From contig CM075987.1 in the NCBI GenBank assembly GCA_038087875.1, positions 20,522,001-20,586,000 of the forward strand: a stretch of 64,000 nt of DNA, given 5' to 3'. The position numbers and the translations under genes were made by a program. Shown piece after piece: positions 38,520-63,485 of this stretch; position 1 is the stretch's first letter, and every line of letters begins with the position of its first letter. The notes under the pieces were generated by a model. The model saw nothing but the letters and a program-made list of their open reading frames with translations, was not told the DNA's origin and ran no database searches. Source of the stretch: Malacoraja senta. Lineage: Eukaryota.

Positions 38520-39440
38520 GAGGGTGCGGGCAGTGGAGGGGGGCAGGGTGCGGGCAGTGGAGGGGGGGCAGGGTGCGGGCAGTGGAGGGGGGCAGGGTGC
38601 GGGCAGTGGAGGGGGGGTCAGGGTGCGGGCAGTGTAGGGGGGGCAGGGTGCGGGCAGTGGAGGGGGGGCAGGGTGCGGGCAGTGGAGGGGGGGCAGGGTG
38701 CGGGCAGTGGAGGGGGGCAGGGTGCGGGCAGTGGAGGGGGGGCAGGGTGCGGGCAGTGGAGGGGGGGCAGGGTGCGGGCAGTGGAGGGGGGGGCAGGGTG
38801 CGGGCAGTGTAGGGGGGGGCAGGGTGCGGGCAGTGTAGGGGGGGCAGGGTGCGGGCAGTGGAGGGGGGGCAGGGTGCGGGCAGTGTAGGGGGGGCAGGGT
38901 GCGGGCAGTGGAGGGGGGGCAGTGTGCGGGCAGTGGAGGGGGGGCAGGGTGCGGGCAGTGGAGGGAGGGCAGGGTGCGGGCAGTGGAGGGGGGGCAGGGT
39001 GCGGGCAGTGGAGGGGGGGCAGGGTGCGGGCAGTGGAGGGGGGGCAGTGTGCGGGCAGTGGAGGGGGGGCAGGGTGCGGGCAGTGGAGGGAGGGCAGGGT
39101 GCGGGCAGTGGAGGGGGGGCAGGGTGCGGGCAGTGGAGGGGGGGCAGGGTGCGGGCAGTGTAGGGGGGGCAGGGTGCGGGCAGTGGAGGGGGGCAGTGTG
39201 CGGGCAGTGGAGGGGGGGCAGGGTGCGGGCAGTGGAGGGAGGGCAGGGTGCGGGCAGTGGAGGGGGGGCAGGGTGCGGGCAGTGGAGGGGGGGCAGGGTG
39301 CGGGCAGTGGAGGGGGGGCAGGGTGCGGGCAGTGTAGGGGGGGCAGGGTGCGGGCAGTGTAGGGGGGGCAATGGAGGGGGGGCAGGGTCCGGGCAATGGA
39401 GGGGGGGGGGCAATGGAGGGGGGGCAGGTGCAGGCAGTGG
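38520..39440. repeat. G-rich minisatellite, 24-26 bp unit GGGCAGTGGAGGGGGGGCAGGGTGC, in POMT1 intron 1
   Basis: More than 30 visible tandem units; degenerate units extend to about 38350. Confidence 0.95.
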
Positions 39441-40030: not shown

Positions 40031-42316
40031 GGGAGGTTGCACGGCCTCGAGGTCACGGCCCGTGACCCGTACTGTTGCCGCGCAACGCCAACTGGAGTAC
40101 ACGCGGTGAATGTACTATGGCTGCCAGCACAGCGGGCCCTTCTTCTGTCCCAGCATCCACTTCCACACTCGCGGACCCCGGGCCGTCTGTCCCCGCGGTC
40201 GGGGGGTCGGTTCGGTGTGTCACCCACAGCTTGCGACAGTGTGGCCAGACAGCGCTGACACCGGGGTGCTGTCCCGAGGGATGCGCTCCTTCGGCCGCTT
40301 ACACCTTGCTCTGGTTCAGAGCGCTCAGTCGCCCTCCACATTTATTTACAGCACAAAAATTGATAATTTCAGCGGTTTTTAACAGGTAAGAAAGTACATC
40401 TTACCTGTTAAAAACCGCCGAAATGGTCAATTTGAGCTGTAAATATTTGTGGATATCCTATCTGGGTAACAGTGAGGGACATTTATCTTACTTCAGAATT
40501 CCAAAAGTGAGGAGAAATGATGGTAGTGAGACAGCTGAAGGGTCAACAACAGCTATAGTGGTTGGAGAACATTGACCGTGCAGATATCAAGATTGAAAAT
40601 ATTGGGAGCTATCGCGTTTGCTCACTGCATTTCATCAACAGTAAGGCATTATTTGTGTTTTTCCTCGATTCCTTTTGTCAGGCGCAAGTTGTGAAAGAAC
40701 ACTCACGATGCGTAGAGAATGTAGAGAAACAAGTTTATTTATTAGCAAGTCTGCAGAGTTGGGTGTCTCCCCTGTCAAGACACACCGAGAGATGGAATTC
40801 ATCTCTCTCTTATTCACATCATTTTACATTTGTTACATTTATTCCTCCCCTTCGGGCTCTTGTCAAATCAGAGCACTGAGGTGCACATTCTACAGGTACC
40901 GCCCCTGGTGCCTCCCAGATCATACATGGCTGTCAGGCGCAAGTTGTGAAAGAACACTCACGATGCGTAGAGAATGTAGAGAAACAAGTTTATTTATTAG
41001 CAAGTCTGCAGAGTTGGGTGTCTCCCCTGTCAAGACACACCGAGAGATGGAATTCATCTCTCTCTTATTCACATCATTTTACATTTGTTACATTTATTCC
41101 TCCCCTTCGGGCTCTTGTCAAATCAGAGCACTGAGGTGCACATTCTACAGGTACCGCCCCTGGTGCCTCCCAGATCATACATCGCATGTACATTTAAATG
41201 AGACATCTTGTCATGATGGGTGTGTTTGCAATATTCATTTATCTCATTACGCAAGCGCACAGAGTGTTTCTCATGACCCTTACCCTAATTCCAGAATGGA
41301 CGGTCTCCTTATCTTCTCTGTTCTCATCCTTGAAAAGTCACCATTTGTACTTGTTCTTTACTCCCCTTATTCTCCGTTCTATACTCTCTACTATACTCCC
41401 TACTAGACAATGGGTTCTTGTCTAAATCAACTATACCTATTAACCCATTCCTCACACTTTGGTATCTAAAATGTTTCAAAAGTGATTAAATCTGGCTGTA
41501 AAATTTTAAAATCACCCATGGTTCTCAAGTGCGTTTTTACATGCAAAAAGAAAACGCTTCTGAAGCTAAATTTATCATTAAAAAATCACAAGCCATAGGT
41601 GGGTTTTGAATTACATTTTACTCAGATGCAAGCCAAGGAATGGCATAATTGTTAGGTGTTAATTGGACATAATCAACCTCAGCAAATTGACAATATCTTT
41701 GAGAGTGGGTATTTAAGCTGTCAGGACATTTTATTATTTGCCAAAATATACATCTCAATAGCATAATAATATAAAACTTACTTTTCACACACCACTCGTA
41801 AGTCTGGAGATTTTTTTAATGATAAATTTAGCTTCAGAAGCATTTTCTTTTTGCATGTAAAAACCCACTTGACAACCATGGGCAATTAAAAAATTTTACA
41901 GCCAGATTTATCACTTCTGAAACATTTTAGATACCAAAGGAATCAAGAAAAAATACAAATAATGCCTTACTGTTGATGAAATGCAGTGAGAAAACGTGAT
42001 AATTACCAATATTTTCAATCTTGATATCTGCACGGCCAATGTTCGCCAACCACTTTAGCTGTTGTTGTCCCTTCAGCTGTCGCTTCTCTCTACTATCATT
42101 TCTCCTCACTTTTGGAATTCTGAAGCAGGATAAATGTCTCTGTTACCCAGATTTCGACAATTATTTACAGCGCAAACATTTCAGGTTTTTAACAGGTAAG
42201 AAAGTACGCATTTTGTGTATTAACAGTGTATGGCGTAGGCTGTCATGTCCTCCACATGGATCGAACTGCTCCGTGCGTCACGCCCTTTGACCCAATGACC
42301 TTACGTGCAACCCTCC
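40031..42316. mobile_element. Non-autonomous TIR element with long internal inverted repeats
   Basis: Termini GGGAGGTTGCACG / CGTGCAACCCTCC flanked by TATA on both sides; arms 40408-40675 plus 41461-41587 are inverted at about 41810-42200. Confidence 0.75.
40676..41456 (-). mobile_element. Solo LTR with internal 255-bp-period tandem duplication
   Basis: TGTCAGG...CCTCACA termini; 4-bp TSD CTTT (40672-40675, 41457-41460); empty site preserved in the opposite palindrome arm; minus-strand AATAAA. Confidence 0.85.
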
Positions 42317-44474
42317 TATATTGGAGGAACAGCACCTTATATTCTGCTTGGGCAGTTTCTAACCCATATTTATTGGAGGAGCAGCACCTCATATTCCTCA
42401 TAGGCATCTCACAACCCATATATATTGGAGGAACTGCACTTTATATTGCACTTGGTCAGCTTACAGCCCAGCAGCATGAAAGTAGACTTCTCGAACTATT
42501 GTCAGCACCCTGAGTGTGGCGACCTTTGCATATCTTGTGTATGCAAAACAAATAATCTCACTGTGACATGTGATAATAAAGTATAATTCATTCATCTTCA
42601 AGTAGCCGTCCCTCCCCCACCCAAGCTCTCTGGCGAGTCTCACTGCCCTCCTGATTCATTTTACTGTTCGTATACCTTTTTGTGACCTTACCCTCAGTCA
42701 ACAATGAACCATTCCAGCAGGGTCTCGACCCGAAACATCACTTGTTCTCGCTCCAGCGCTGTTGCCTGTCCATCATTTTGTGTCTATCTACATTTCCTTG
42801 AGTAGCATATTTGATTTGTCGTTTTCACACCTTACCCTTCCATATCCTCTTCCTTGACGCTCAGTCTGTAGAAGGGTCTCAACCCGAAACATCACACATT
42901 CATTCTCTCCAGAAATGCTGCCCGTCCGACTATGAATAAAAGAATGATTTGGAAGAAGTCTAGTTTCATTCTGCCAACAATGGGTGGCAATCAATTAAAA
43001 TTATATTGAACAATGTATAACTTTTGGTCGACATAAAATAAAGGCAGTGCTGCAAGATTCCAAACAATTGCAAGAACAAACCACGTTCATAGGATAACAG
43101 CTTACATCGAGATTGAGTATCCGATGTATCCAGGGGAGGTGTCTAGGGTCCTTCCACTGCTGAACATTGAGAGGCAGAGTCTGGTGGAGACACCCCTCAA
43201 ACAAGGAAAGGAATATCACCCCAGGTGGGCACATGAGTAGCAACGGTGTTTTGTTTACAGAGAGATGGAAACCCTACTGAGTGTGACAATACTGCTTGTA
43301 TAAACGCTGAGAATCTCAGAATTTTTGCAGATTTTTTTGTATGGATTTTTAATTCTGAATAAAAAGTTTATTTTGGGGGAAAAAACGAGTGGCAAGAGTT
43401 TTAAATGTACACAACTGTTACACACTTTTGTACACACTTTTGAACGCACATACCAAAAGTATATGGATTTTTATATACTGTTTTTATAACATGGCAATAA
43501 GAAATTGCTGCTAGAAATCTTTGTCAAAATCACATCAAAAGCTTCAGTGAAGTCAAGAAGGTGCATCAGCGTCTGTTAAAGGACACAAATTGTGATCGTT
43601 TTCCAAGTTTTTTAGAATTAGTCTGCTGCATGTAATGCTAAGTTTTAGCATTGTCGTGGCCATTTACAAATCGGCTGCTATAAGCATGACTGAATTCTTC
43701 AGCATAAAGCACAATTTTTCACTGTATTTAGTTTCTTTGATTAAAGGTCAGAATTTCAAAAATTATTTACAAAAATTATCTTTGATGATCCAATATAAAC
43801 AATTGTTCAATTATTTCTTATATCAAAGGAAGTCTAATAATGTACAAATTCTAACGCTTATTATAATCAAACTACATGTAATTTTCAAAGCTTTTACTAG
43901 AAATGAGGAAAATTGAGTAGAACTGCAAGCCCCAAAATGAATTTAGATGGAATAAAAGTATATTGCAATGATCTCTACAGGACCCTTTCATTAGATACTC
44001 ACATACATGCCCAAATTGTTTGCATTAATTGTCCAAAACAACAGATGTTCAAAACATATTGCATATATATTTAAACTATTACGGTTGAGTTTTTCTTGAT
44101 CAAACAAATATCCTAATTTCTCTGTTTGTGCATTCCAAAAACAAGCTCTCTTGCTTTCCCCAAGCATTGCTTGAAACCCCCAAAATAAGTTTGAGATTTG
44201 ATTTCTTCTGCCAAAATTTCATCCATTTGAAGGAGCCTGGGATGTTTGTTCACTTTAAAAGACAGCAAAATTGTGGACAACCAACATATATATATATATA
44301 TATATCTGTTAATCCTATAGGGTTATGGTCGCCATCTTCGATGTGCATATGAAAGGTCTCCAGTCTGATCCTGAGTAGACATGTTTAGCCTTCTGCTACA
44401 AGTTTTGAGAGATATGTAATTAGGCCCATCCCCATGAAATTTTTCAACAGCTGCTCAAAATTCTGGATAGAGAC

Positions 44475-44800
44475 ACAGTGGCACAGCTAGTAGAGATGCT
44501 GATGCACAGCTCCTGCAATTCCACATCAATCCTGCCCTTTGGCCCTGCCTTTGTGAGGTTTCCATATACTCTGTGAGCATGTGGGTTTCCTCTGGGTGTT
44601 CAAGTTTTCTCCCACATCCTAAAGATCTGTAGGTGGTAAATAAGCTGGCTATTAAATTGCTTATAAAATGGATTTGAGTAGTAGAATCTGGGCAGTTAAT
44701 GGGAATTTAGGGAGAATAAAATGGGACACATGTTGGATTAGGTAAATGAGTGTTTAACAAGTGGTGTGGACTCACTGGACCAAATAACCCATTTCTGTGC
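44475..44800 (+). mobile_element. Old tRNA-SINE
   Basis: CACAGTGGCACAGCTAGTAGAG head and shared SINE body. Confidence 0.6.
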
Positions 44801-47227
44801 TACTGTACCTGATAGTCACTGCCATTTTAATCAAACACACTCGAAGGAAAAAAAGTTAACACTTTATTTGGTCAAGTGAAAAAAGCATCAGCTGCTTTAT
44901 TTAAATAAACCAGATCCTTTCATATGGAAAGAGCTATTACAAATCACATATTTGAAAGGACAAACAATAGGTACTGAACTGTAAACCAGAGGCTAACACC
45001 CACCCAACCAGTCAGCCTCATCAATAAATAACTCCTCAGTGTACACAACATATCCACTATCTGCCCTTTCAAATATCAAATCTACACAAAAACACAACAG
45101 ATAAGGCCAAAAGACTAGTATGCACGTTTCTGGTTACAAACACAAAATATATATAATGGTAAATATGTTTAAGGTAACTCGTTCAGAGCTTCTAACTCTT
45201 CCTTGGAATAGAAGTGTGACATTTATTAAAAAAATATAAAAAGATATTGAGCTGTGTGGTTCAGAAAGATATATTTACTCAAAAATACACTTGAAAATAC
45301 ATGTAAAAAAAAATTATCTGCTTCTCCTCCTACAATAACTTTGATATGAGTTTTAATAGTTATGAACATAAAAGGCTAATCAAATAATGTGCCAGCAAAG
45401 CCGCAGTAAGTAAAAGTTTCGCTGTCCTGGTTCACATGACAAATAAACACTCCTGAACTTTAGTATATTTCTCCTTCCCACAACACACATTTTTGACCAA
45501 GAAATATAAACTCAATTAACTGACAAGATAAAATAATTGGCTCCATAACATGGGCAAATAATGACAATGTTAGAAGTGGATCTGCATCAATTAAAATCAT
45601 GCTAACATGTGCATCACAAAGGAGAGTTTTTTAGCAATTAAATTCAGACAGTTTTGGGAATTTCTTCCATTCATCTTGACAGCTGGGCTCTGACAATATT
45701 TCTGGATGGGTTTCCCTTCAATTTCAAAACTACAGCATCTCTGCCTCTTGTTAAATGAGCTACTGTACATCAAACAATCAAAACTACAATTAAAAACATG
45801 TAAATACCTACCTAATGCTGTACATTATTTAAGTCAGATGTTTGAGAACAAGGAACTCAAGCCAACATTCGCAAATGTATTATTTAAGATAAAAGTCAAC
45901 AGATTTTTGAAAACGTGCACGGGTCTTTTGGCCCCACCATTACACAGTTGTCAAGACAATATATAAATAATTGATCACTGTGAAACATGCCCAATGCTGG
46001 TATGTTTCAACACATAAGTACATATTAAATAATGTAGTGTTCAGGAGACCATTGATTCAGAGGAAGAACTCAGTGGGACTGCTTCACTGATTACATGAGT
46101 GTTTCGTGAAATGCATTATAGTTTTTCTAGCAAAACAATTGCTCTTTTTGGAGGGAATCTTATTTATATATAGAGAAATCCATTCTCTTTTGTTGATTCT
46201 GTAGGCTATGTTGAATCAGGGCCTCCAAAAAAAATACTGGGAAGCAAAGTATAGATTTCCTGCTCATAATAGTCTGACAGAAGCTCTAGACAACAGGAGA
46301 CACAAGGAACTGCAGATACTGGAATATTGAACAAAACGCAGAATGCTGGAGGAACTCAGTGGGCCACCACCTCAACAGATACTGCCTGACTGGCTGAGTT
46401 GCTCCAGCATTTTGTGCTTTGCACTAAACAATAGGAGACTGGCAGGAAAAAGAATAATCCACCAGGTGGCAATTTAGGCTATGGATGACAAACCTCAGGG
46501 GCCAATTCTTAAGCAGTGTTGCACATCCTTACAGTGTTCAAGAAAATGAGCCCAAGCGTAATATGCCTAAAGTATTGGAATACAACAATTATTTTGGTTG
46601 ATGGATTAACGTACCAGTGTCAGACAATAGACAGCCAAGTGGATAGTCACAAGGATCCAAGCTCCAGATCTGCCCACCACCTAACTCATCAGAAATTCAC
46701 CTTGGTCCACATCATACTTCATCTCTTGGCAAGAAGAAGAAAAATAAGTAAATGGTGCACTCATCTCAGGAGCATATCTTGAATAGATGAAATGAGCTTT
46801 GACATCATCATCATCATGAAGAGCTTTAGCATTTCAGAACACGGTACAAATAAGCAATCCATTAGTATATCCTCTTTCTCCCATCAAAACTTGAACCTGC
46901 CAGCACACAGAGGTTTCATTCAGCTGCAAAGGTAAAGATCACCATCATGCAATGCTAATTTCCGAAGGATCATAATGCGACATAAATACCTGATGGTGAG
47001 CAATTTACAGAATGCTATTTTCCAATAGAAGCTGTGTGAATAGCTAAGGTTCTTCAGCAATATTTTTCAAATCAACAATCCTCCCACCCACTCGCCCGAT
47101 TCACTTCCAAATGTTGATTTTTTAAATTGACTATGCCAGGTATTAAAGTAAATTTCTTAAACAAAGTAAATATGGAGTCATTTTTTCCTAACAAAGCAAA
47201 TGGAAAGCTACCGTCAAATCCAGGAAA

Positions 47228-48152
47228 GAAAGAACTGCAGATGCTGGTTTAAATAGAAGGTAGACACAAAATGCTGGAGTAACTCAGCGGGTGGGGCAGC
47301 ATCTCTGGAGAGAAGGAATGGCCGATGTTTCGGGTCGAGACCCTTCTTCAGACTGATGACAGGGGAGGGGGCTGGACAAAGATAGAATGTAGTCGATGAC
47401 GGTAAGACTAGTGGGAGAACTGGGAAGGGAAAGGGGATGGAGAGAAAGCAAGGGCTATCTGAAGTTAGAGAAGTCAATGTTCATACCACTGGAGTGTAAA
47501 CTACCCAAGCGAAATAAGAGGTGCTGTTCCTCCAATTTGCGCTAGGCCTCACTCTGACAATGGAGGAGGCCCAGGACAGAAAGGTCAGATTGGGAATGGG
47601 AGGGGGAGTTGAAATGCTGAGCTGTCAACTTCTCCACATCAGCGCCAGATGTCAAATTCGCTACATCGGCGAGGCAGAGGTTCACTTGCATCTCATCCAA
47701 CCTCATCTACATCAACGAGACCAAGAGCAGGCTCGGCGATCGTTTCACTGAACACCTCCACTCAGTCCATCTTAACCTACCTAATCTCCCAGTGGCTAAG
47801 CACTACAACCCCTCCCATTCGCAATCTGACCTTTCTGTCCTAGGCCTCCTCCATTGTCAGAGTGAGGCCCCGTGCAAATTGGAGGAACAGCACCTCATAT
47901 TTCGCTTGGGTTGTTTACACCCCAGCGGTATGAACATTTACTTCTCTAACTTCAGATAGTCCTGGCTTTATCTCTCCATCCCCTTCCCAGTTCTCCCACT
48001 AGTCTTACTGTCTCCGACTACATTCTATATTTGTTCCGCCCCCTCCCCTGACATCAGTCTGAAGAAGGGTCTCGACCCGAAACATCGCCCATTCCTTCTC
48101 TCCAGAGATGCTGCCTCACCCGCTGAGTTACTCCAGCATTTTGTGTCTACTT
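47228..48152. mobile_element. Inverted pair of Penelope-like 3' fragments
   Basis: 47228-47620 (minus) and about 47660-48152 (plus) are reverse complements over several hundred bp; both carry the hammerhead-like core. Confidence 0.85.
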
Positions 48153-50901
48153 TCTCCTGGGTACTGATTATAGTGGACACACCTAACTTGAACATGTGGT
48201 TATCATTATCTAGGTAAATATACATTGAAAAATTGGGCATAGAGTTTTATGTTTTATGTTTCAAAACTAATGAAAGGCTAGAGTTATGCAATGACAGGCT
48301 AATACTTGCATGTACTTGACAATGAATACGAATTCAACTTGAGATTCCTCTTCACTTAAGAAATACACAAGATCAAAATTGTCTTGTAATTTAAATTCAA
48401 AATTCAGTTACTAGAAGTCTTAATGGTATAACACATCTTTTCAGGCTCTCAATCACATGATTATTCTCTGACCTGATCCCTCCCCTGATTCTTCAGCGAA
48501 TTACATACAAAGAGAAAATTCTAAATCCGTCATGTGCAGACAACAGAAATGATCCTGAATGCCACTACATTGTAAAATATCGATCTAACCGCTGAATTCC
48601 TTACCAATTCACGCAGCGTTAAGGGATGCCAAGATTACATTACACAATAAAATATGAAGATGGATTACTTTTAAATTTGCCCGCGGCTAAGACTAATGGC
48701 TGCTTTAAAATTAAACCCCCTCAAGGGATGATGTTTTACTGAGACTCCTGATTAACCCTCATTGCTTTTCACAAAATTTGAAAATTCCCATCCAATATAT
48801 AAAAATGATACTAAACAAAAAACATGAAGTTGGAACTCTCAGAGTTGAAATGTTAACAATTATGACAACCTTTGCTACAGCTACTGTCCCTGTTATATTC
48901 AAGCAAACAGCCTGGATTGAGAAGCTCAATACAATTAAGAGATCTACAGTGGAGTTGAGGAAAGACCGCTCCACAGCTTAGTAAGAGGTCATATTCAGTT
49001 GTGTGAAACAGAATAACTTTGAGGTCTTTCTCTTGACAACTCATCTTTCAGCAAAGATACTAGTCCGGCTTAATTCCTTACACACATATTCAGATTAGTT
49101 GTCTAAACCGGTTGATTAGCAATAAGAATGTTATCGAAGTGACCCCGGCTGTCAGGGAATCCCGAGGAATGTGCCACACACATCACGTTCCGTGTTATCA
49201 CATAGTTGCAGTGCTAATTCAAATCCCGCAACAGTGCCAAACAGATCGTTTGTATCAACATAACCGATAACTGCAAATAAGCTGAACTATATCCTTCCTG
49301 CCACATTTGATCAACATAATGGAGGGCAAAAGTCATTAAGTTGTTTACCAGAAAGTACACTGTAAAATTGAATTCCTTTTGTCATGGAATTCAGTTCATT
49401 ACAGACAAATGGAGAACAAAATTCATAATTGTATTTGTATACTGGTGAACTATGTACAGTGGAGTGCAATATTCCAAATTATAAAGGTAAGGATAATTCC
49501 GCCTTACAGGACTGTCTGCAGTAGTCCATCAACACCGATGCCAAAGTTGCTAAGTTATTGAAATGCGCGCAAATACATATGCACATTTATTTATTATATT
49601 TCTCCACATGCACTATACATGTCATGACTTAAAAGCATGGTACTATTTTTAAACAAATGACTACTTATTCCTCATTTTGTGTCATGCTCCTCCACGAAAG
49701 GATTCTTAATTTGCAGAATCAACAATCTTTCTCCTCAATGTTTAGCACTACAGGAACTACAGTGCTGGATATGAATGATTTGTATTCTGGACATTGAGAT
49801 GTGCGCACAACATCCAATTCAAATGGTTCAATTAACTATACTGGAAATACAGCACTGCTCATAACCCATTCTCACTTGTCATGGACAAAATATTCTGCAT
49901 GAAATAAAGTCTAAACAGTCAAACGCTAGGAAAAGAATGACAGATCCCCTCAAAGTTGCCTGCCAGCTCCCATTGCAAATAATTAACAAACTGTTTCTTC
50001 AATATTCAAGGGAAAAAAAACGTGCTATTGATTTTTGTATACAATTTCAATAGTATATCCTTATTTCCACACATTTGTCCACTTACTGTGTAAAGAAATG
50101 AAGTAAGCCATCAAGCAACTAATAAAACTGCATTCGATAAATGCCATTTCTCCAAGTAATAGTTTGCTGTAAATGTAACTTAAAACTATGCTGCAGTCTT
50201 GAACTAATGGTAAATTTGACTTCTTCCAAACTACTACGGTGGGAATTACATTTTTCAGTCATTATGAAAATGAAAAGTTGAAATGCACTACATCTTGGTT
50301 AATCTTATTTTTCAGTACATGACCAACATATATATAAATGGATTGTCAGGTGACAATGTACAACTGTGTCTCTCTGCACGAACGTCACAGAAATAATTTC
50401 TATATTCCAAATCTTGATTTTGTCTCCGTTCACAAAAGAACCAATGACTAGAAGTTAGCTGATGCACCATGCTGTAATGCCACGACGTAGGTGCAATATA
50501 CTGTACAAGAAAGGAAACCAGCACATGTTAACAATCAGAACTCAGTACAATTCTTCTACGTATCCATCCTGCAGCGTTCCAAATGGATACTCACTTGCCA
50601 AAGTTGGTTACATATCCTGAATTCAACTGTGGATACTGAATTAATAATCATCCTCTCGAGAAGTACAAAAGCCTCAAGTTCATATCACCTTGTACTGGTA
50701 TCAGTTTTACTCTCTGCTTTTCAAGACCGAGCAGCAAATGAAACAGCATTTTTTTTAAACGAAGTCTTAGCATTCCAGAAATCCCGGGTCCGTTCTGATT
50801 ATTATATATATTTAGATATATATCAATTTTTGTTAAACTGTAGGGGATCCTTATGCTTCCCCATCTTCTGCTTTAATGCCATGGTGGTCAACTGGTCCAG
50901 T

Positions 50902-51099
50902 TCAGAGAGCTCTCTCCTGCGTCACAGCATCACTGGCTGGGTCCTGAATGTTTGAAACATTTAAGGTTGAGCTTTCTTCTCCATGATCAGCATTAGAAGT
51001 GGCTGGTTCCACCTTCTGGGCCAGGTTGGCAAGCTTCCCCTGCTGATGCTGTTCAAAGAATTTTTGGGTCAACTGCAGCACCTCCGCCCGCTGTTTAGC
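50902..51099 (-). CDS. PRRC2B: PRRC2B terminal coding exon (first stop TGA 50902-50904; same frame stays open to TAA 50851-50853)
   Basis: AKQRAEVLQLTQKFFEQHQQGKLANLAQKVEP...QERAL*TGPVDHHGIKAEDGEA*; AG acceptor. Confidence 0.88.
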   Translation of the reverse strand, partial: AKQRAEVLQLTQKFFEQHQQGKLANLAQKVEPATSNADHGEESSTLNVSNIQDPASDAVTQERAL

Positions 51100-52081
51100 C
51101 TATGAAAATAAATGAAGACTCTTTGATTTTTTTAAAAACTATACAGCATACTGCACACACCAAGATTTACATTAATATGACTTTGAAGCAGAAATTTTCT
51201 CTTTAGGATCATACTAACCTTCATTCATTCATCTTTTTGAATCATGGCAGCAAATAAATAATTAATTCTCAGGAATGTGCGCTGTTTGACACTACGGCCT
51301 TGAAACAGAAGAATTTTAGTTTTTTTTGGAAGGTTTGCAACAAAAAATCATCAAATTGATTACTGGGATGGAAGGTTTGATCCAAGAAGAAAGGTTAAGC
51401 AAATTAGACCTTATCTTTTTTGCAGAAAAATGAGAGGCTATATCATTAAAACTTACAAAAATTCTTACATGTCTTGACAAACGAAATAGAGAGGTTTTGT
51501 TTTCCCTCTTGGATAGCGAGCCCTGATTGCGATGTCTGCAACGAGGAGTCACAGTTGTAAAATAAGGGGTTTGATATTCAGGAGAGTGAGAAACAATTTC
51601 TTTATTCAGATGGCGATGAATCTTTGTAATTCACTACCCAAGTGGAGGACAGCATTCAAGACATAAATCAATAGATTTTTAAATATTGAGGAAATCATTA
51701 ATATGGGGTTATTGCAGGAAGATGGCGTAAAGATAAAAGATCAGCCATGATCTTACTGAGTAGTCAGGGGGACTGAACTGCCTAATCCCATTTATATTAA
51801 TCTTCATGAATCTCATGAAAAGCATTAGGTCAGCTTTCCCATTTAGGAAGGAACCCATTATAACAAGATGTTTTTCTTTAACTTTCATATAATAGCTACC
51901 TACATAATCTGCAAATGCCACCAGCTAGGTAGCTTACTTCACACAGCCAATGTAAAATACAATTGTTTCTCTGGTGTAGAGTGGAAAATTGAAGTAAGCC
52001 GTCACCAAAAGAAGGACTCTTGTGAGAAAATAGGGATGAGGCAGGAAGCAGAAACATTTTAGTGTCTTTAAATCAGCTCAC

Positions 52082-52300
52082 CTTCATATCTTCTTCTCCT
52101 CTTTCAGAGTTGCAAGCTCGAATAGTAGGTACTGAATTCTCCCGAGTCGAGCTGTGGATTCGAGGCTGGCGTATTGTTATAGGGGGTGCAATGGGCCCTT
52201 TGTTCATCTGCATCACAGGACGTTGAATTGGAGTAGGATATGATCCTACACTGGGAGGCCTCATGTGCATGATCATGTTGCCCTGGGGTGGAGGTGGCAT
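52082..52300 (-). CDS. PRRC2B: PRRC2B penultimate (possibly alternative) exon
   Basis: Symmetric phase-0 219-nt exon, TTAG acceptor and GTGAGC donor; Pro/Met-rich MPPPPQGNMIMHMRPP...GEEDMK. Confidence 0.75.
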
Positions 52301-52931
52301 CTAAGTAAATTGATGGGAAACAAAAGAAAATTAAATGGTTTTAAGTGTTTCATGTCTTAAGATAAAATGTAATTGTTCAAATTGTTGATTGATTCCTGGG
52401 ATGGCAGGTTTGCATGTTTGCCATACGAGGGAAGATGCAGCTGAACTCTTTTTTTCCAATGATCTAATTGAAACAGGTTTTTAAAGCGTTTACAGGTAGA
52501 TGTAGACTGATGATTCACCTCGCTGGGTGTCTACAACCAGCTCTTAGAGTTTCACTTTTCAGGACCATGAGAAGACATTTTTTTTCAATCATAGAATAGC
52601 AAATCTCTGTGATTTTCTATCCAAGAGATCTATGGAGGCCCTGTTTTTTAATTTAAAGTTACAGATCAACAGCATTTTCCATTTAAAATAAATTAGAGAT
52701 TTGGGGTAAGTGCATGAGAATTTTGTGGCATGAGATCAGCCACAATTTCAGTGAATGGTGAAACAGAAGCGAGGCTTATTCCTGTTTCAATGTTTTACAT
52801 CAATGCTACTTGTAAACAAAATGTCACATGCCTCAATTGAACTTCAAAACACATATTCCGTCCGGCCAGTTGAGATAGTTGAAGCATTCATCTTAAATTT
52901 CCCAGATCCTCTAGGTTTTTACAAATTTCCA

Positions 52932-53920
52932 TCATATATATTATATATAACTATTACAACTCTTCGTTAGTTAGTTTGTTTGTTTCTCCTCACATCTCCT
53001 TCAAAACCCGACGCGGTAACGGAGACATTTTTACATATTCCGGTAGATTTAGTTCATGAATTCAAAATCTCCTCATCTGAAAAATCGGTTAATTATTTCC
53101 AGAGTTTTTTTACTAAAATTTAAATCTAATTGAATCTGAAGTGAGCTGCATGACGTCACAATGCCTTTGCTCCTCGCGACCAGCTGTGCAGACTTTCAAT
53201 GCGCAGCCAGTTACGTAGCCCAGCCGCCCTCCCCCACGGACTCTGGATTGAAGCCCTTGAACACGTGATGAAGTCGTGCAGAGGGCTCCGCTGGGCTTCT
53301 TGAAGTTCAACAACATGGCGGCGGCGGTCGTTATTGCAGCGCGGGCGAGGACAAGCACAGTTGAAAAGTCGTCGTCGCGCCCGTCACAGGGGACGACCTC
53401 CTCTCTGTCTCCCCCGCCTGCCGCTGATTTTCACAGTACTCAGCACTGCGGGCCTCGCTCTGGTCAACGACGCCCACAGCCTACCTCGGGCCCGACTCAT
53501 GATGGGGCCAGTGCGGCCGGCCGTAGCGCCCCGCCCACATCCCTGCAGCCAGCTGTAGCGTCCCGCTCTGCCCACAGCCCTCACTCCCCCAGGGCTGAGT
53601 TACCTCCCCCCCCCCCCGCCATAACTCGCAATCTGACGGCCAACCCGAGAGATGTCGACGAACATCCGAGAGCGGCCACAGTCCAGCCGCCCCCCCCCCC
53701 CCCGTAACTTCCTCCCCCCTCCTCTTCTCTTCCCCCCTCACCACCTCCCCCTCTCTCATCCACTCCTCTCTCTCCCCCTCCCCCTTCTGCTCCCCCTCTC
53801 CCCTCCCCCCTTTGTGTTTGGGGGGTGGTCAGTGTGTGTGTGACGTCACAGAACCCCCCCCCCCCCCCCCCGCAACCGCGCGTTGAGGGGATGGGACCCA
53901 ATGGGACCCCCTTGGTCTAG
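52932..53920 (+). mobile_element. Non-autonomous Helitron
   Basis: 5' A|TC; 3' GGGACCCA..GGGACCC degenerate hairpin then CTTGGTCTAG|T; no TSD. Confidence 0.7.
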
Positions 53921-54601
53921 TTAGATTTTAAACTGTGTAGGTAACCCCTCCATTCCAAAAAGGGATATAGAAATCAGAAAACTGCAGCTAATTTTGCTCA
54001 TGGTACAAGGATAGCAAGGACAGCAAGTGATGTAAAGAACATAAGGGTGTCCTAAGGGATAGAGATAGGTTACATGTCCATTTGTGAGAAAACAAGTGAC
54101 AAATAAAAATAAATATTGAGATTACAGAAGCCTGACATGCAGAAGTGTCCATGTGTCCAGTGCATGCTTTACAAAAGTATACAAAAAAACCCCAAAAGCA
54201 TTAGAATTTATTGTTAGAGAAATTGAATACAAAGCAGAGTGCTATTGCCTCATGTTGGGCATTGATGTGACCACATCTGGAGTACCATGCACAATAATGG
54301 TCTTGTTACTTAAGAAAAGATGTGTTGAAAGTAATCCAAGGTTTATTGCATAAATATCTGAAATGGACAGGTTATCTTATGAGAACAGGTTGGATAGAGC
54401 AGGTTTGTATCCACTGGAGTTCTAAAGTGCAACATGAAACATCTCTTATAACTTTCTAATATAAAAAAACTGTCTCAAATGATACATGTTAGAAAAGTAT
54501 AAGAGCAGGATGCTTATTCAAAGAACCTTGTGCATTATTTTGGTGCAAGTCTTATATTGTTACTTTTACATCAAAGTAGTTCCACAGGTACAGCAACAAA
54601 C

Positions 54602-54707
54602 CTGTTGAGCATAGTGGCCCTGGATACCTCCTGGAATATTTAAGCCCATTGTGTTCGCAGATGATCCAGGTCCAGACGTTTTCCCACCTGGGCTTGAACA
54701 ACTGGGT
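54602..54707 (-). CDS. PRRC2B: PRRC2B exon
   Basis: PSCSSPGGKTSGPGSSANTMGLNIPGGIQGHYAQQ; AG/GT; 106 nt. Confidence 0.9.
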
Positions 54708-55350
54708 CTAAAAAGCACAATATTAAGAGATACACATTGACCCACAAAGCAAAGATAAATGCCAGTCCAGTTTGTTCTTATCGTTAAATTAACAACAGAA
54801 ATGTGTCAAATAGCTGTGTGCCATGAATGGTTCATGAAATTATTAACCCTATTTAAGCTAATTCATTCTTCCTTTGGACAAGTTTCATTGTCTAGTCACT
54901 GACTAACTACGTTTGTGATGAAACAATCTCCAATTAGTATTAGGTACAATATATTTTCCATTTCACCTTTTCCATTGTTTGATGTTGATTTGCACTATTG
55001 TTTTATTTGAGGATCATTGTCTGAATATCCACAGAATGAATAATTACACCTAAATTATTACACAAATGAAATGTAAACAATCTATATAGTAATTAGAGAG
55101 TTCAAATCCACTCCCATTTACTTAGATCAAGTTAAGGTGAAATTAACTGTGCAAGGAAACACAGTCCACACGTTTAAAAAATAATCAGTTTTTTGATTTA
55201 TTACATAATGAACATCACTTGAAAGATCATATCACTACACAAACTATTCAAAAGCGTATTATAGGACAAATTTTCACTGCCCATAAAAATAAAACAAGTA
55301 TTTCTCCAAACATTTTGTAAAGTACTATTGAACATTTTTTGAAAGGCTAC

Positions 55351-55442
55351 CTGAAGAGGTTTGGTACAGGTCCTCCAGGGATTCCAGAGGAAATCTGCTT
55401 GTTATCTGCAAATTGAAATGCATTTAGGTCCATTTGGGGAAT
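55351..55442 (-). CDS. PRRC2B: PRRC2B exon
   Basis: IPQMDLNAFQFADNKQISSGIPGGPVPNLF; AG/GT; 92 nt. Confidence 0.9.
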
Positions 55443-55544
55443 CTGAAAACAAAAGGCAATTTTAAAAGATGTTGACATAATGCCACCTTCTATTAATAGC
55501 AAAATGTTTACATAAATATATTGCTTTAAAACGTTAGTATTTCA

Positions 55545-55805
55545 CAGCACTGTGGCGCAGCAGTGATGTTGCTGCTTCGATCCTGACTATGGGTGCTGTC
55601 TGTACGGAGATAGTACGTTCTCTATGAACTGCGTGGATTTTCTCCGAAATCTTTGGTTTCCTCCCACACGCCAAAGACGTAGGATAATCAGCTTGGCATA
55701 AATGTAAATTGTCCTTAGTGTATGTAGGATCATGTTAATATGCAAGGCGGACTCGGTGGGCCGAAGGGCCTGTTTCCGCGCTCAAACTAAAAGCTAAACT
55801 AAAAA
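55545..55805 (+). mobile_element. tRNA-derived SINE
   Basis: GTGGCGCAGC head, TTCGATCC, GGGCCGAAGGGCCTGTTTCC, (AAACT)n tail. Confidence 0.75.
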
Positions 55806-56023
55806 ACACATTCACACAACACTGTTATTTAAAACCAATCGGCTTGCCCCAGCATCAGTACAGTACTAGATTGACACTACAAAACTCCACTCCTCCCCAT
55901 CAACTTTCATTTGCAAGCTGTTATAATTTTCCATAAGCATTTGTTTTAATTTCTTTGGTATCGTTCCTGTTAGCAAAACATGTGGATCAATATTCAGACA
56001 GAATGATGAAGGAACTAGCGTCA

Positions 56024-56335
<312 letters not shown>

Positions 56336-57432
56336 TTAATATTTGAATTGAATTATACCAATGCAAACAACACAATACATTATATATTGTATGCTGCAAC
56401 AGAAATATACCTCCTACACAATTACAAATCCATGAGAAGCAGAAAACAGTTACCCATTTAAAAATAACCCCTGTACAAATCATCATTATATAGCATTTTC
56501 AGTGAATTATAATTTTCACCCAAGGAGGAAAGAAACATATTGTGAACCCTCTCAATGAATAAGTCAATATTATGAAATGGCCAGGGATTAGATGACGACG
56601 ACAGATTATAGGTATGCATGCACCAAAATGGAGATGGTTAAGGAGCATAAAGAGAATTGGAGGGGGGGGTGGGCAAAGAAGAGACTTTTTTGTTGTCTCT
56701 CCAACAATGGGATGTAAGCTAGAGCTAGGTCATTCAAGAGAGAGGTTAGAAATATGTCTGCATGCAATAGATTGCAGAAGGTTCATCTCAACCACAAAAA
56801 GCAATGGATGCCATCTTGATTTAACAACCACATATCTAAGACTGACAGATTTTTTTCCAAAGTAGTTCTTAAAAAGCAATGCAGCAAGGTGAATGGGTGA
56901 AAGGGGAGAACAGAGTTAAGTTAAACATCTACCATATTGCATCTGAATGGAGGAACAGGCTTGAGGGACCTATGAACCTTCTGTATTTAATACAAGACAA
57001 TTTTTGGTTTACATGTTGGCGGAACCCAATTGTAGAAAAAGACTCAAGATTGTCATACGAGAGAAATTATGAATATATTGTATAATACATGGAGACACAA
57101 GAGATTGCAGATGCTGGAATATTGTGCAAAAAATAGCTGGGGGAACTCAGTGAGCCAGGCAACATCTGTGGGTGGAGGTGGGACAAAAAATTGTCTATGT
57201 TTATGTATAATTTACAACCATACCCCGTTAAATCAATTAAAATACATTCCTTGAATACATATTTTAAATGAATGCTACATGGCAGCAATGGATCCATTAA
57301 GGATTACAATGCATTGTGTTCAAACCAAATACATTACCAGTAAAAACTTCAGTTTACATTTTTTGATGGCAACATGTTACTACTGAAACAAAATTGCATT
57401 TATTCCTGAATAGAGATTGCAGTAATTCCTTA

Positions 57433-57684
<252 letters not shown>

Positions 57685-58044
57685 TTAATTAAATCCAATT
57701 AATTGTATTTCTCTCTCTAACACACACACACACATAAAAATTGACTGGAAACTTCAATAAATGAAATACACAGAAGAAATTAATCTTTACATTTCTTAAG
57801 CGCAGGTTAAAAGTTGCCTTGCATCTTTCTTCAATTCTTATCACGTTTTAAAGTTAGATTCGTAGGTTCTTTCAAGGTCAGTTTATTGTCACATGTACCA
57901 GTTAAGGCACAGTGAAATTTCACTTTTTGTCAAGTGAGAGCTCAAAGCAAGGCAACTTTTAATCTGCATTTAAGAAATTAAATCAACTTTATTTGCCTTC
58001 TATTTCCCCAGCAAAGTTACTCAGCAGTTGAAGACATATTTTTA

Positions 58045-58230
<186 letters not shown>

Positions 58231-58517
58231 CTAAAGAGAGAAAAGCAACCAACCATGATACCAGGCACAGCAGCCACGTTGCAACTGATTTGTCCTATCA
58301 TACCCCACAATCTCTGGAAAATGTTAAGTTTCATACTGGCATTCGTCAAAACAGCGTCCCAAAAGAACTCAAACTGCCACATCTGAATAGTGCCAGTGTT
58401 TTCGAACAACACCACATTCAGAAGTCAACATGTGCTGGCACACAGTGCTTTAACGGAAAAGATTTTCAGACCTCAAGTTGCAAATAAGATAAACATGAAC
58501 GAAAACGCTACCATTAC

Positions 58518-58627
58518 CTGAGAGAGGCTGGCCTGGAAACCTTGTTGTTGTGGGATTGATTGCGGAAGGAGCCGTGCTTGACTGGCAAAAACGTGGCCAT
58601 CCATGTACAAAGGGGAAATATGGCTCC
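58518..58627 (-). CDS. PRRC2B: PRRC2B exon
   Basis: SHISPLYMDGHVFASQARLLPQSIPQQQGFQASLSQ; AG/GT; phase-compatible with neighbours. Confidence 0.9.
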
Positions 58628-59140
58628 CTGAAAAAAAAAATCACAAGAAACCATTTCTCCAACATGCTTGTTACTTATGGCACAAATGATGGAAAATAAA
58701 ACAAAATGTTACTTTCTTAAAATGATGATTGTTTCACTGTGTGAAATAGTGAAATTCATAATCAATTAATAATTGTAGGTCCTTAATCTGCATCATTTAC
58801 TCCGATAACTTAAACAGGAATTAGTCATTGAAATGCAACCTTTGGTAGAAGGGAATACAAGAGGCTTTTTTCGCACCACTAATGTTTTTAAAAAAAAAGA
58901 CAAAGTGCAGAAGTAACTCAGGTCAATTAGCATCTCTGAATATGGTAGGCAATTTTTGGGTTAGGACCCTACTTTCAATTGATTGTAGCAATAACTTGAT
59001 GGAATACTTGTTAACAAGAAAGCACAGAACAATCATGTGTATATTCTAGTAATGCCAGGTAATCTATATATCAGAATTATTAATCAGAGCTGCCCTTTAA
59101 GGTAATCAAAAAAGAGGCATTAATACCAATAAGCTATTCA

Positions 59141-59338
<198 letters not shown>

Positions 59339-59736
59339 CTATTCAAATAAAGAAAATACTGTAAAAATCAGAAATATTGACCTAAAACTCAAAGGCATCT
59401 CCCCCAAAATACTATGATTAATCCACACACACATTTGTCACAAATATATACATGCAACACAGCAGGCAAGAACAAGTTGAAGTTTAATTTTAAAATAAAA
59501 ACAAATAAAACAATGAAGAAACGTTAACCCCTCAATATTTATCATCTTTTCAACCTGCATATTTTTTTTTTTAAATGGCATAAACCCAAGTTAAAAATCG
59601 TCAGGCCTTTGCAGTTAATTTCCACAAGGTTCCCTATTAAATCAACATACTGCTACTAAAAAATCTTTAACATCTGAATAAATTTCTTCTTTAAAGTCAC
59701 ATTGTTTCCCGAACTTTCCCAATTGTGCGATTTTAC

Positions 59737-59838
59737 CTTTAATGTAAGGTCTGTACTTGGTAGAGAAACAGGAGTGAGGTTGGGACCCTGTTGGAGATGC
59801 TCTCTTCGCAGGATTGGGATTGACTGGCTTAGTGTTAC
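59737..59838 (-). CDS. PRRC2B: PRRC2B exon
   Basis: VTLSQSIPILRREHLQQGPNLTPVSLPSTDLTLK; AG/GT; 102 nt. Confidence 0.92.
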
Positions 59839-60649
59839 CTGAAAAACCAAAAGCCGATACTAAATGAAGACTTCGATCCATATTTGCATCATTAATGAAA
59901 AATTGTTTAGCTTTGCTTAAAGTATTGGGAGCAGAGAGATGACTCAACAAGACATATATATGAAGGACTTTGATAGAGTGGAAGCAGAAATAGGTTTCCA
60001 CTTTTGAGGAATAGCATAACTGTGGCTATCGATACAAGATAATTAATTAATCAGAATGGTGAGAATGTGAAACTATCAATCACAGGGAGTGGTTGAAGTC
60101 AATAGTATGCACTTGTTTAGGAGGAGGCTGGACAATTCTACAAGATGCTGAGTAACCTGGGTTCCTAATGCACAATTTGCGATTGTAGTTTGCAGCTATA
60201 GCAAGTAATCAGGAATGCTGTCTGAATTGACTGGCATTCACAACAATGCGAATGACTTATCTGAAACAAAAATCTCTGTGATCTTGACAATGTGGATATG
60301 AAAATGATGACTCCTCTTGACACATTCTTGACATGGAAGGGTGTGAAATGCTATCCTGGTAAAGTGGAACATGGAATTGAGGTCAAAGTGAGAACAGCCA
60401 TTACTTTAATAAATGGTGGAGCAAGTTTGATTAACTGGATTTGAGTCAACGTGACATGCTCCTGCTCCTAATTCATGTACACGCTCACACGAGGGCAAGG
60501 GCAATGAAGGGTTACATTGCTAGATTTAAATGATGAAAGACCGAACAAAGCTCAAGTGGAGCATAGATGCCAGCATGGGCTTTGGGCCAGATGGTATGTC
60601 TCATGCCAGATATCCTTTGCAACGCTATGAAGTTTTATTATGTTCCTGC

Positions 60650-61826
60650 CCTGAGCTGGTTCGTCTCCTACCTCAAAGATAGGAGTTTCTCTACAAACAT
60701 AGGCAACTCTTTCTCTTCCCCAGCTAGCCTTTGCTGCGGGGTTCCACAAGGCTCCATCCTAGGCCCCATTCTCTTCTCTCTGTATATGCTCCCCTTAGGC
60801 CAAGTCATTCAAAGGCACGGCATTTCCTTCCACTGCTATGCAGACGATACACAGCTCTATCTCCCCCTGAAACTCAACAACCGATCAAATCTACTCAGCC
60901 TTATGCACTGCCTTGAGGATATAAAGTGTTGGATGGCCTGAACTTCCTCCAACTAAACGAGAGCAAGTCTGAGGTCATCCTACTCGGCCCCTCGGACTCC
61001 ATCAAAATGATAGCAGGCAGCCTTGGAAGCCTAACCTTCTTACTCAAACCTCACGTCGAAAACCGTGGTGTGATATTTGACTCCGCATTGAAGTTTGACA
61101 AACAAGTCAATGCTGTGGTAAAAGCTAGCTTCTTCCAGCTTCGCACGATAGCTAAAATCAAACCATTCCTCCAATTCGACGACCTTGAAAAGATCATCCA
61201 CGCATTTATCTCCCGCTTTGATTACTGCAACTCCCTTTACACTGGCATCAGCCAATCATCCCTGTCCTGCCTGCAATTGGTCCAAAACGTCGCAGCGAGA
61301 CTTCTGACGGGCACCCGAAAAAGGGACCACATCACCCCAATTCTGGCCTCTCTCCACTGGCTCCCAGTGCGGTTCAGAATCAATTTCAAGCACCTACTTT
61401 ATGTATACAAAGCCCTTAACGGGCTTGCCCCCACCTACATCAAAAATGTACTAACCTACCATTCTACCTCCAGGTGCCTCAGGTCGGCCGACTTGGGGCT
61501 ACTGACTATCCCGCGGTCCAGGTATAAGCTCAGGGGCGACCGCGTTTTTGTGGTTGGAGCACCTAGACTGTGGAACAGCATCCCTCTTCTCATCAGAACT
61601 GCCCCCTCCATCGACTCCTTTAAGTCTAGACTTAAAACTTATTTCTACTCACAAGCGTTTCTTGAGGTCCTCTGAGGGAGCGCTGTATGTATGTATTTAT
61701 GTATGTATTGTTAGACCTATGTACCACTGTATGTAGCACGTTAGTACCTGCACTGATGTAAAGCACTTTGGTCAACGAGTTGTTTTTAAATGTGCTATAG
61801 AAATAAAATTGAATTGAAAATTGAAA
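60650..61826 (+). mobile_element. L2 LINE, 5'-truncated
   Basis: GVPQGSILGPILF, FHCYADDTQLY, DHITPILASLHWLPV, APRLWN; AATAAA plus (AATTG)n tail; one frameshift near 60935. Confidence 0.92.
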
Positions 61827-62042
61827 AATTGTTCTGATTTAAGTCAATGATTGCATTCATTGTTCTAAAAAGCTTTTATAATCGCAGAGAAGTTCTGTTA
61901 GTAGTTTTCAGGTAGGTGAAAATCTATTGTTTTTAGTATACTTCATATAAAAATTTAAAACTATAACTGGATTTTCACTGTTTGATCTCAGAGCTATGCA
62001 AAGAAATTTGATGAAGCAACACCTTCAGAATATAGTACTCAC

Positions 62043-62129
62043 GTTGTTCACTAATACATCCTGCAGTTTAGTGATCGAGTTGGAAACTGGATTCGGCACT
62101 GAATTCTGTGGCAAATTGAAATCAGAATC
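62043..62129 (-). CDS. PRRC2B: PRRC2B exon
   Basis: DSDFNLPQNSVPNPVSNSITKLQDVLVNN; AG/GTGAGT; 87 nt. Confidence 0.9.
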
Positions 62130-62214
62130 CTAAAACAACAAACAAAAAACCTTCTCAGTTTATCAGAAGACAAACCACACAGACTGTCGGAACATGGAGA
62201 AGTTGTAAATATTA

Positions 62215-63206: not shown

Positions 63207-63485
<279 letters not shown>

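What the first reader, a model, noticed from the sequence alone, without database searches (positions are those of the whole stretch)
50851..50904. In-frame UGA in the last PRRC2B exon with the conserved C-terminal tail intact behind it
Seen: the frame reads ...ERAL-TGA-TGPVDHHGIKAEDGEA-TAA. From memory, PRRC2 paralogues end in an R-T-G-(P/A)-I-K...K-x-E-E motif, so the TGA sits where Arg (CGA) is expected and 16 homologous codons follow. Inference: this is a CpG-deamination nonsense allele that clipped the tail, a sequencing error, or stop-codon readthrough giving two C-termini. The +4 base is A, not the leaky TGA-CTAG context, which favours recent truncation.
Basis: partly seen in the sequence, partly recalled or inferred. 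Interest (0 to 1): 0.7.

Follow-up and report, generated by a model that had tools for sequence, protein, structure and literature searches.

The report
Ancient stop clipping shark PRRC2B tail
The in-frame TGA is real, but it is the normal stop codon of PRRC2B in all cartilaginous fishes. It looks like a very old nonsense change that cut off a 16-residue tail still made by bony fishes, and the leftover tail codons now evolve like 3'UTR, not like translated sequence.

Summary
On the minus strand the last PRRC2B exon reads ...QERAL-TGA (50902-50904), then 16 open codons (50854-50901), then TAA (50851-50853).

The 16 codons are truly homologous to the tail of bony-fish PRRC2B, which is Arg followed by TGAIKPQSVKxEExKA and a stop. 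The length and the final stop position are the same.

The TGA is neither recent, nor an allele, nor an error.
- Annotated PRRC2B of 23 cartilaginous-fish species, including the chimaera Callorhinchus, ends at this exact position.
- A spliced skate RNA-seq contig carries the TGA.
- So the stop goes back to the common ancestor of cartilaginous fishes.

Tests for translation of the tail by readthrough are negative or weak.
- Post-stop omega is 0.72 (not different from 1). The 65 codons upstream give 0.20 (p = 3e-11).
- The IKPQ core of the tail has decayed.
- Two carpet sharks share a +1 frameshift that removes the old TAA.
- The base after the stop is always A, not the leaky UGA-CUAG context.
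- There is no SECIS and no structure supported by covariation.

The ghost tail lies in a 3'UTR that is conserved across cartilaginous fishes, which probably explains why it survives.

Best reading: an ancient, fixed last-exon truncation (about 0.72). Functional readthrough is not excluded (about 0.17).

The parts
52081..52302 (-). Penultimate coding exon of PRRC2B (ends ...ERGEEDMK, phase 0, donor AAG|gtgagc)
   Evidence: Sequence. The spliced RNA contig L007 aligns to 52302-52081. The ORF is listed.
50905..51099 (-). Coding part of the last exon: 65 codons, AKQRAEVLQLTQKFFEQ...TQERAL
   Evidence: 60% identical to the C-terminus of Callorhinchus PRRC2B and identical to the Leucoraja tail. Omega 0.20, LRT p = 3e-11.
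50902..50904 (-). TGA: the normal PRRC2B stop codon of cartilaginous fishes, at the position of Arg in bony fishes
50854..50901 (-). Ghost tail: 16 open codons (TGPVDHHGIKAEDGEA) homologous to the bony-fish tail TGAIKPQSVKxEExKA
   Evidence: Omega 0.72, not different from 1. This is about the 20th percentile of 3'UTR windows and above all 17 CDS windows.
50851..50853 (-). TAA at the position of the bony-fish PRRC2B stop codon
   Evidence: Lost through a +1 G frameshift in Stegostoma and Chiloscyllium.
48361..50850 (-). 3'UTR, contiguous with the last exon for at least 2.49 kb. Its first 600 nt or so are alignable across cartilaginous fishes.
   Evidence: RNA contig L007 aligns to 51101-48361 in one piece. 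Six-species alignment and substitution rates.
50761..50800 (-). Most conserved 3'UTR block (AATCAGAA.GGAC..GGGAT.TCTGGAATGCTAAGACTTC), nearly invariant from chimaera to skate
   Evidence: 0.21 substitutions per site against 0.44 in the ghost tail.

Best explanation
This is the ordinary stop codon of PRRC2B in cartilaginous fishes. In their common ancestor, the Arg codon in front of the conserved 16-residue tail (R-TGAIKPQSVKxEExKA in bony fishes) became TGA. The stop lies in the last exon, so under the standard exon-junction rule it would not trigger nonsense-mediated decay, and the shortened protein (...QERA[VL]) could become fixed. The 16 former codons and the old TAA became the first 51 bases of the 3'UTR. 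They are still recognisable because cartilaginous fishes evolve slowly and because this 3'UTR is constrained at the nucleotide level. They are no longer selected as protein. Shown: the stop is shared by the whole clade and is present in RNA, the tail is homologous, and a protein-level signature is lacking. Inferred: the direction of change (Arg ancestral), the single-base route, and the reason for the nucleotide-level conservation.
For: (1) Annotated PRRC2B of 23 cartilaginous-fish species ends at ...QERA[VL]. They cover chimaera, cow shark, bullhead, mackerel, ground and carpet sharks, sawfish, electric ray, stingrays and skates. (2) DNA of six species shows TGA-ACT at the same codon. The spliced RNA-seq contig L007 shows it too. 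(3) Five bony fishes, including coelacanth, gar and bowfin, read Arg plus a nearly invariant 16-residue tail. Gar DNA has CGG there. (4) The codon model gives post-stop omega 0.72, LRT p = 0.52. The adjacent 65 codons give omega 0.20, p = 3e-11. All 17 sliding 16-codon CDS windows have omega below 0.72, and 14 of 17 are significant, so power was adequate. Of the 3'UTR windows, 20% have omega at or below 0.72, with a median of 1.08. (5) Substitutions by codon position are 7/4/10 in the ghost tail and 16/12/49 in the CDS. (6) The bony-fish core IKPQ is replaced by V[DE]HH in elasmobranchs and AEQN in Callorhinchus. (7) Stegostoma and Chiloscyllium share a +1 G insertion that shifts the frame and removes the TAA. 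After it the open frames differ in length. (8) The 3'UTR is alignable from chimaera to skate for more than 600 nt, while the upstream intron is not. That gives a nucleotide-level reason for survival. (9) The +4 base is A in all sequences, not the UGA-CUAG context of proven vertebrate readthrough (PMC4132726).
Against: The ghost tail stays open in all six species. It keeps the old TAA in four of the six species, which represent both deep branches. Its last seven codons in Callorhinchus match gar at 18 of 20 aligned bases, although no other 3'UTR similarity to gar exists. Frame 0 has the lowest omega of the three frames (0.72, 1.30, 2.62). The stop is TGA wherever DNA was seen, never TAA or TAG. 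All of this also fits weak selection on a readthrough product. Sixteen codons in six taxa cannot exclude omega near 0.5. The direction of change rests on the paralogues' tails, which I know only from memory.
Confidence: 0.72

Rival explanations
1. Programmed stop-codon readthrough. A fraction of ribosomes decode the conserved UGA with a near-cognate tRNA (Arg, Trp or Cys by general knowledge). This gives a second PRRC2B isoform with a 17-residue extension ending ...IK.EDGEA, kept by selection in cartilaginous fishes.
For: UGA is the stop in all 7 sequences seen. The ORF is open in all of them, with the same length and TAA in four of the six genomes, across the split of chimaeras from sharks and rays. 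The C-terminal half resembles the bony-fish tail. Callorhinchus matches gar at 18 of 20 bases at the tail end. Frame 0 has the lowest omega.
Against: Omega of 0.72 is indistinguishable from 1 and lies within the 3'UTR range. Every real CDS window is lower. The IKPQ core is lost. Two carpet sharks share a frameshift. UGA-A is not UGA-CUAG. No downstream structure has covariation support and the fold z-scores are only -1.7 and -1.8. Staying stop-free is weak evidence, since 4 of 35 3'UTR windows are also stop-free in all six species.
Confidence: 0.17
2. Reverse direction of change. The stop is ancestral, and bony fishes lost it (TGA to CGR), recruiting 16 codons of former 3'UTR as a new tail. 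The skate sequence was then never coding.
For: With PRRC2B alone the comparison of cartilaginous and bony fishes has no outgroup. No paralogue or cyclostome sequence could be fetched here.
Against: The bony-fish tail is nearly invariant from coelacanth to teleosts, which is unusual for a recruited 3'UTR. From memory only, PRRC2A and PRRC2C carry the same R-TG.IK tail, which would make it older than the duplication. The 3'UTRs of gar and sharks share nothing else.
Confidence: 0.08
3. Recoding of another kind: UGA read as selenocysteine, or A-to-I editing of UGA to UGG.
For: UGA is the only stop that either route can use.
Against: No SECIS match at E up to 5 across 44000-51200, which covers the whole known 3'UTR. 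The homologous residue is Arg, not Cys. The RNA-seq consensus is TGA. The small hairpin around the stop is not kept in Callorhinchus.
Confidence: 0.02
4. Sequencing or assembly error, or a heterozygous recent nonsense allele in this individual.
For: None beyond the first impression from a single sequence.
Against: The same stop is present in 23 annotated species, six independent genome assemblies and one RNA-seq assembly.
Confidence: 0.01

Closest known systems
PRRC2B (BAT2L1) of bony vertebrates
   Same: Same gene, by its relatives' names and the exon-by-exon match. The last exon starts AKQR... or TKPR.... The segment ...[KR]-[PA]-[VL] precedes the disputed codon, and 16 codons and a stop follow.
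   Different: Bony fishes read Arg at that codon and translate the tail TGAIKPQ[SA]VK[AV][ED]E[GS]KA. Cartilaginous fishes stop there, and the IKPQ core has decayed.
Vertebrate programmed readthrough genes (OPRL1, OPRK1, AQP4, MAPK10, MDH1; PMC4132726)
   Same: A conserved UGA, a short in-frame extension (13 residues in MAPK10 by PMC4132726; 16 codons here), and likeness concentrated near the C-terminus of the extension.
   Different: Those genes have UGA-CUAG conserved throughout vertebrates and a positive coding signature after the stop. Here the context is UGA-ACUG, omega is about 0.7 (not significant), and one clade carries a frameshift.
Last-exon nonsense truncations that escape nonsense-mediated decay (general class)
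   Same: A stop within the last exon, the downstream codons left as 3'UTR, and a stable, spliced transcript.
   Different: Most described cases are disease alleles or recent polymorphisms. This one is fixed in a whole vertebrate class, and its ghost codons are still legible.

Membership tests
PRRC2B orthologue | C-terminal exons match annotated PRRC2B proteins of related species | tested here: met
   60% identity to the Callorhinchus PRRC2B C-terminus; the last 65 residues are identical to Leucoraja and Rhinoraja PRRC2B; a spliced skate transcript aligns to 12 exons in 48361-63461.
PRRC2B orthologue | N-terminal BAT2_N domain (PF07001) | not testable with these tools
   The 5' part of the gene lies outside the window. 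The full-length relatives carry PF07001.
Programmed stop-codon readthrough (vertebrate type) | Leaky stop (UGA) conserved as such | tested here: met
   TGA in six genomes and one RNA contig. The identity of the stop is unknown for the other annotated species.
Programmed stop-codon readthrough (vertebrate type) | Stimulatory 3' context (CUAG, or at least C at +4) | tested here: not met
   ACTG follows the stop in all sequences. The motif is described in PMC4132726.
Programmed stop-codon readthrough (vertebrate type) | Protein-coding substitution signature between the first and second stop | tested here: not met
   Omega 0.72, LRT p = 0.52. This is above all CDS windows and at the 20th percentile of 3'UTR windows. 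Only 16 codons in 6 taxa were available, so weak constraint is not excluded.
Programmed stop-codon readthrough (vertebrate type) | Frame and second stop kept across the clade | tested here: not met
   Kept in skate, sawfish, cow shark and chimaera. Broken by a shared +1 G in Stegostoma and Chiloscyllium.
Programmed stop-codon readthrough (vertebrate type) | Conserved RNA structure 3' of the stop | tested here: inconclusive
   In RNAalifold the covariation term is unfavourable (+1.56) and only 1 pair has a compensatory change. Single-sequence z-scores are -1.7 and -1.8.
Programmed stop-codon readthrough (vertebrate type) | Extended protein or footprints observed | not testable with these tools
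   This needs ribosome profiling, mass spectrometry or a reporter assay.
Selenoprotein gene | SECIS element in the 3'UTR | tested here: not met
   Rfam scan of 44000-51200 at E up to 5: no SECIS family.
Fixed last-exon nonsense truncation | Sense codon at the homologous position in the outgroup, stop in the last exon, shared by the whole clade | tested here: met
   Arg in five bony fishes, CGG in gar. The stop is 195 nt into the last exon. It is shared by 23 species. The direction of change is not independently rooted.

The most novel reading that the evidence does not exclude
Cartilaginous fishes have kept, for over 400 million years, a low-level UGA readthrough isoform of PRRC2B. It restores an Arg, Trp or Cys plus a remodelled 16-residue tail (...IK.EDGEA) without the known UGA-CUAG signal. 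This would be a lineage-specific switch from constitutive to conditional expression of a conserved C-terminal motif in a translation-initiation regulator.
Probability: 0.15. Interest if true: 0.6.

Novelty: new member of a known kind. Interest (0 to 1): 0.3.

Why it matters
It removes a false alarm: nothing is wrong with the assembly, and the gene is not broken in this animal. It also records a clean, datable event. A whole vertebrate class has lost the most conserved C-terminal motif of PRRC2B, a regulator of translation initiation and a stress-granule protein. This suggests that the tail is dispensable, or is covered by PRRC2A and PRRC2C, in that lineage. The ghost tail is a useful caution for readthrough prediction. 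An open, homologous, co-terminating post-stop ORF can persist for hundreds of millions of years inside a conserved 3'UTR without a protein-level signature. If readthrough were nonetheless shown, it would be a vertebrate case without the UGA-CUAG signal.

Tried and rejected
- Sequencing error or recent allele: rejected by the 23 species and the RNA contig.
- Selenocysteine: no SECIS.
- Editing substrate or stimulatory structure: no covariation, weak z-scores.
- A possible pairing between the end of the ghost tail (GAAGAT..AAGCAT..GGATCCC) and the invariant 3'UTR block appeared in RNAalifold. All its pairs are invariant or wobble, and it is not the minimum-energy fold in the skate. I leave it as an idea only.
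- Searching the 65-residue exon alone for short exon ORFs from other genomes found nothing.
- Searching with the bony-fish tail for PRRC2A and PRRC2C returned only four PRRC2B proteins, so the paralogues' tails stayed unchecked.
- DNA of Scyliorhinus canicula, Heterodontus and Mustelus could not be fetched because the files were too large. Isoform X2 proteins were not on record.
- The PDB has no relative of the C-terminal region.
- Literature searches found no report of PRRC2B readthrough or of this tail.
- The scan's earlier notes had nothing near this place or under these words.
- blastn found no 3'UTR homology between sharks and gar other than the tail end.

Full report
**What is there.**
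- The gene lies on the minus strand. After an acceptor (...ttttcatag) the last exon opens at 51099.
- It reads 65 codons (AKQRAEVLQLTQKFFEQ...DAVTQERAL, 50905-51099), then TGA (50902-50904).
- Then come 16 sense codons, TGPVDHHGIKAEDGEA (50854-50901), and TAA (50851-50853).
- The preceding exon ends ...ERGEEDMK with a phase-0 donor AAG|gtgagc.

**Which gene and which animal.**
- A search of the 65 residues against 1.84 billion representative proteins gave one real hit: the C-terminus of Callorhinchus milii PRRC2B (E = 1.9e-10).
- The last 65 residues are identical to PRRC2B of the skates Leucoraja erinacea and Rhinoraja longicauda. The penultimate exon differs from Leucoraja by one residue.
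- A spliced RNA-seq contig from a skate (Logan SRR11241661, L007) aligns at about 97% to 12 exons between 63461 and 48361. The last exon and at least 2.49 kb of 3'UTR align in one piece.
- So the window comes from a skate, and this is the true 3' terminal exon.

**The stop is old and universal in the clade.**
- Every full-length annotated PRRC2B I could retrieve from cartilaginous fishes ends at ...TQERA[VL], exactly where the window has TGA.
- That is 23 species: Callorhinchus, Heptranchias, Heterodontus, Carcharodon, Cetorhinus, Mustelus, two Scyliorhinus, Rhincodon, Stegostoma, Hemiscyllium, two Chiloscyllium, Pristis, two Mobula, Hypanus, Narcine, Leucoraja, Amblyraja, Rhinoraja.
- DNA of Callorhinchus, Heptranchias, Pristis, Stegostoma and Chiloscyllium shows TGA-ACT at that codon. 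The RNA contig shows it too.
- A sequencing error, a heterozygous allele and a recent truncation are therefore excluded.
- The stop predates the split of chimaeras from sharks and rays, which by general knowledge is more than 400 million years old.

**The 16 codons are a real ghost of a coding tail.**
- PRRC2B of bowfin, gar, coelacanth and two characiform teleosts reads ...KP[VTA]R and then TGAIKPQ[SA]VK[AV][ED]E[GS]KA and a stop. That is Arg plus 16 residues.
- In gar DNA the Arg codon is CGG and the stop is TAA.
- The post-stop peptides of cartilaginous fishes have the same length and end on a stop at the same place:
  - skate TGPVDHHGIKAEDGEA
  - Pristis TGPVEHHGINAEDGEA
  - Heptranchias TGAVEHHGIKVEDGEA
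  - Callorhinchus TEAAEQNCIKMEDGKA
- Their ungapped BLOSUM62 scores against gar are 33 to 47. The maximum over 920 stop-free windows of this 3'UTR is 16, and 0 of 100000 shuffles reach the observed score.

**Is the ghost tail still translated? I tested each signature that defines vertebrate readthrough genes (PMC4132726).**
- *Context.* UGA is followed by ACUG in all sequences, not CUAG.
- *Coding signature.*
  - I used a six-species tree with branch lengths from the whole region.
  - A Goldman-Yang type codon model gives omega 0.72 for the 16 codons (LRT against 1, p = 0.52).
  - The 65 codons just upstream give omega 0.20 (p = 3e-11).
  - Power is adequate. All 17 sliding 16-codon windows of the real CDS have omega below 0.72 (maximum 0.61), and 14 are significant.
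  - In 35 windows of the 3'UTR the median omega is 1.08, and 20% are at or below 0.72.
  - Parsimony substitutions by codon position are 7/4/10 in the ghost tail and 16/12/49 in the CDS.
  - The ghost tail therefore behaves like the 3'UTR, not like the CDS.
- *Frame.* Stegostoma and Chiloscyllium share a +1 G in the GGGG run at codons 14-15. This shifts the frame, removes the old TAA and gives open frames of different length.
- *Motif.* The invariant bony-fish core IKPQ has become V[DE]HH in elasmobranchs and AEQN in the chimaera.
- *Structure.* RNAalifold finds no covariation (term +1.56). Single-sequence folds have z-scores of -1.7 and -1.8.
- *Other recoding.* There is no SECIS match in 44000-51200, and the RNA consensus is TGA.

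**Why the ghost survives.**
- The ghost tail changes at 0.44 substitutions per site on the six-species tree. That is below CDS third positions (0.82) and the distal 3'UTR (about 0.75), so it is not free.
- The whole proximal 3'UTR is conserved from chimaera to skate for more than 600 nt, with a nearly invariant block at 50761-50800 (0.21 per site). The upstream intron cannot be aligned.
- This 3'UTR conservation is specific to cartilaginous fishes. blastn against the gar 3'UTR finds nothing except the tail end itself, at 18 of 20 bases in Callorhinchus.
- The simplest reading is nucleotide-level constraint on the start of the 3'UTR together with slow molecular evolution. This is an inference.
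- Staying open is not strong evidence by itself. 4 of 35 3'UTR windows are stop-free in all six species, and few single-base changes in these codons would create a stop.

**What keeps readthrough alive.**
- The stop is TGA wherever DNA was seen.
- The frame and the TAA are kept in both deep branches.
- The C-terminal half (IK.EDG.A) is the better conserved half.
- Frame 0 has the lowest omega of the three frames.
- With 16 codons and six taxa, an omega near 0.5 cannot be excluded.
- I put functional readthrough at about 0.17.

**Direction of change.**
- I take Arg as ancestral because the bony-fish tail is nearly invariant, and because I recall PRRC2A and PRRC2C carrying the same tail.
- That recollection is not a test.
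- The reverse scenario, stop loss in bony fishes, gets about 0.08.
- A CGA-to-TGA transition is the obvious one-step route, but the ancestral codon is unknown, since gar has CGG.

**Verdict.** The explanation, though, is ordinary: an ancient, fixed, last-exon nonsense change that is already the annotated stop in every cartilaginous-fish PRRC2B. It is a modest evolutionary curiosity and a useful negative example for readthrough screens. I found no paper describing it.

Noticed in passing
window 52072-52083 (-), donor of the penultimate exon: Reading on into the intron gives K-V-S-stop (AAG gtg agc tga). RefSeq predicts isoforms ending ...EEDLKVSKC in several sharks, and one bony fish (Scleropages) ends ...EDGMKVSHPL. 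An isoform that skips the last exon altogether may therefore be old and widespread.
   Followed up: partly
window 50200-50850 (-), strongest at 50761-50800: The proximal PRRC2B 3'UTR is alignable from chimaera to skate for over 600 nt, with a nearly invariant 40-nt block. No similarity to the gar 3'UTR was found. Its function is unknown.
   Followed up: partly
L004 about 57800-57815 and L006 about 66070-66085: Stegostoma and Chiloscyllium share a 1-base G insertion in the ghost tail, and TAAGG has become TAATG. This is a carpet-shark marker that shifts the old frame.
   Followed up: yes
L001 about 28545 (Callorhinchus last exon): Callorhinchus lacks 15 bases (QGKLA) in frame within the last coding exon, relative to all elasmobranchs.
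   Followed up: no
window 17030-17686 (+) and 60567-60941 (+): ORFs with reverse-transcriptase domains (RVT_1, E = 3e-20 and 6e-11). They are likely LINE fragments. The second lies inside a PRRC2B intron.
   Followed up: partly
window 38467-39370: A G-rich 25-bp minisatellite, 36 copies, 94% matches. It produces long proline-rich pseudo-ORFs on the minus strand in three frames.
   Followed up: partly
window 40676-41182: A perfect (100%) tandem duplication of a 255-bp unit.
   Followed up: no
window 48462-48570 (-): A weak U3 snoRNA-like match (23.7 bits, gathering score 34, E = 0.034) near the distal end of the PRRC2B 3'UTR. It is probably chance.
   Followed up: no
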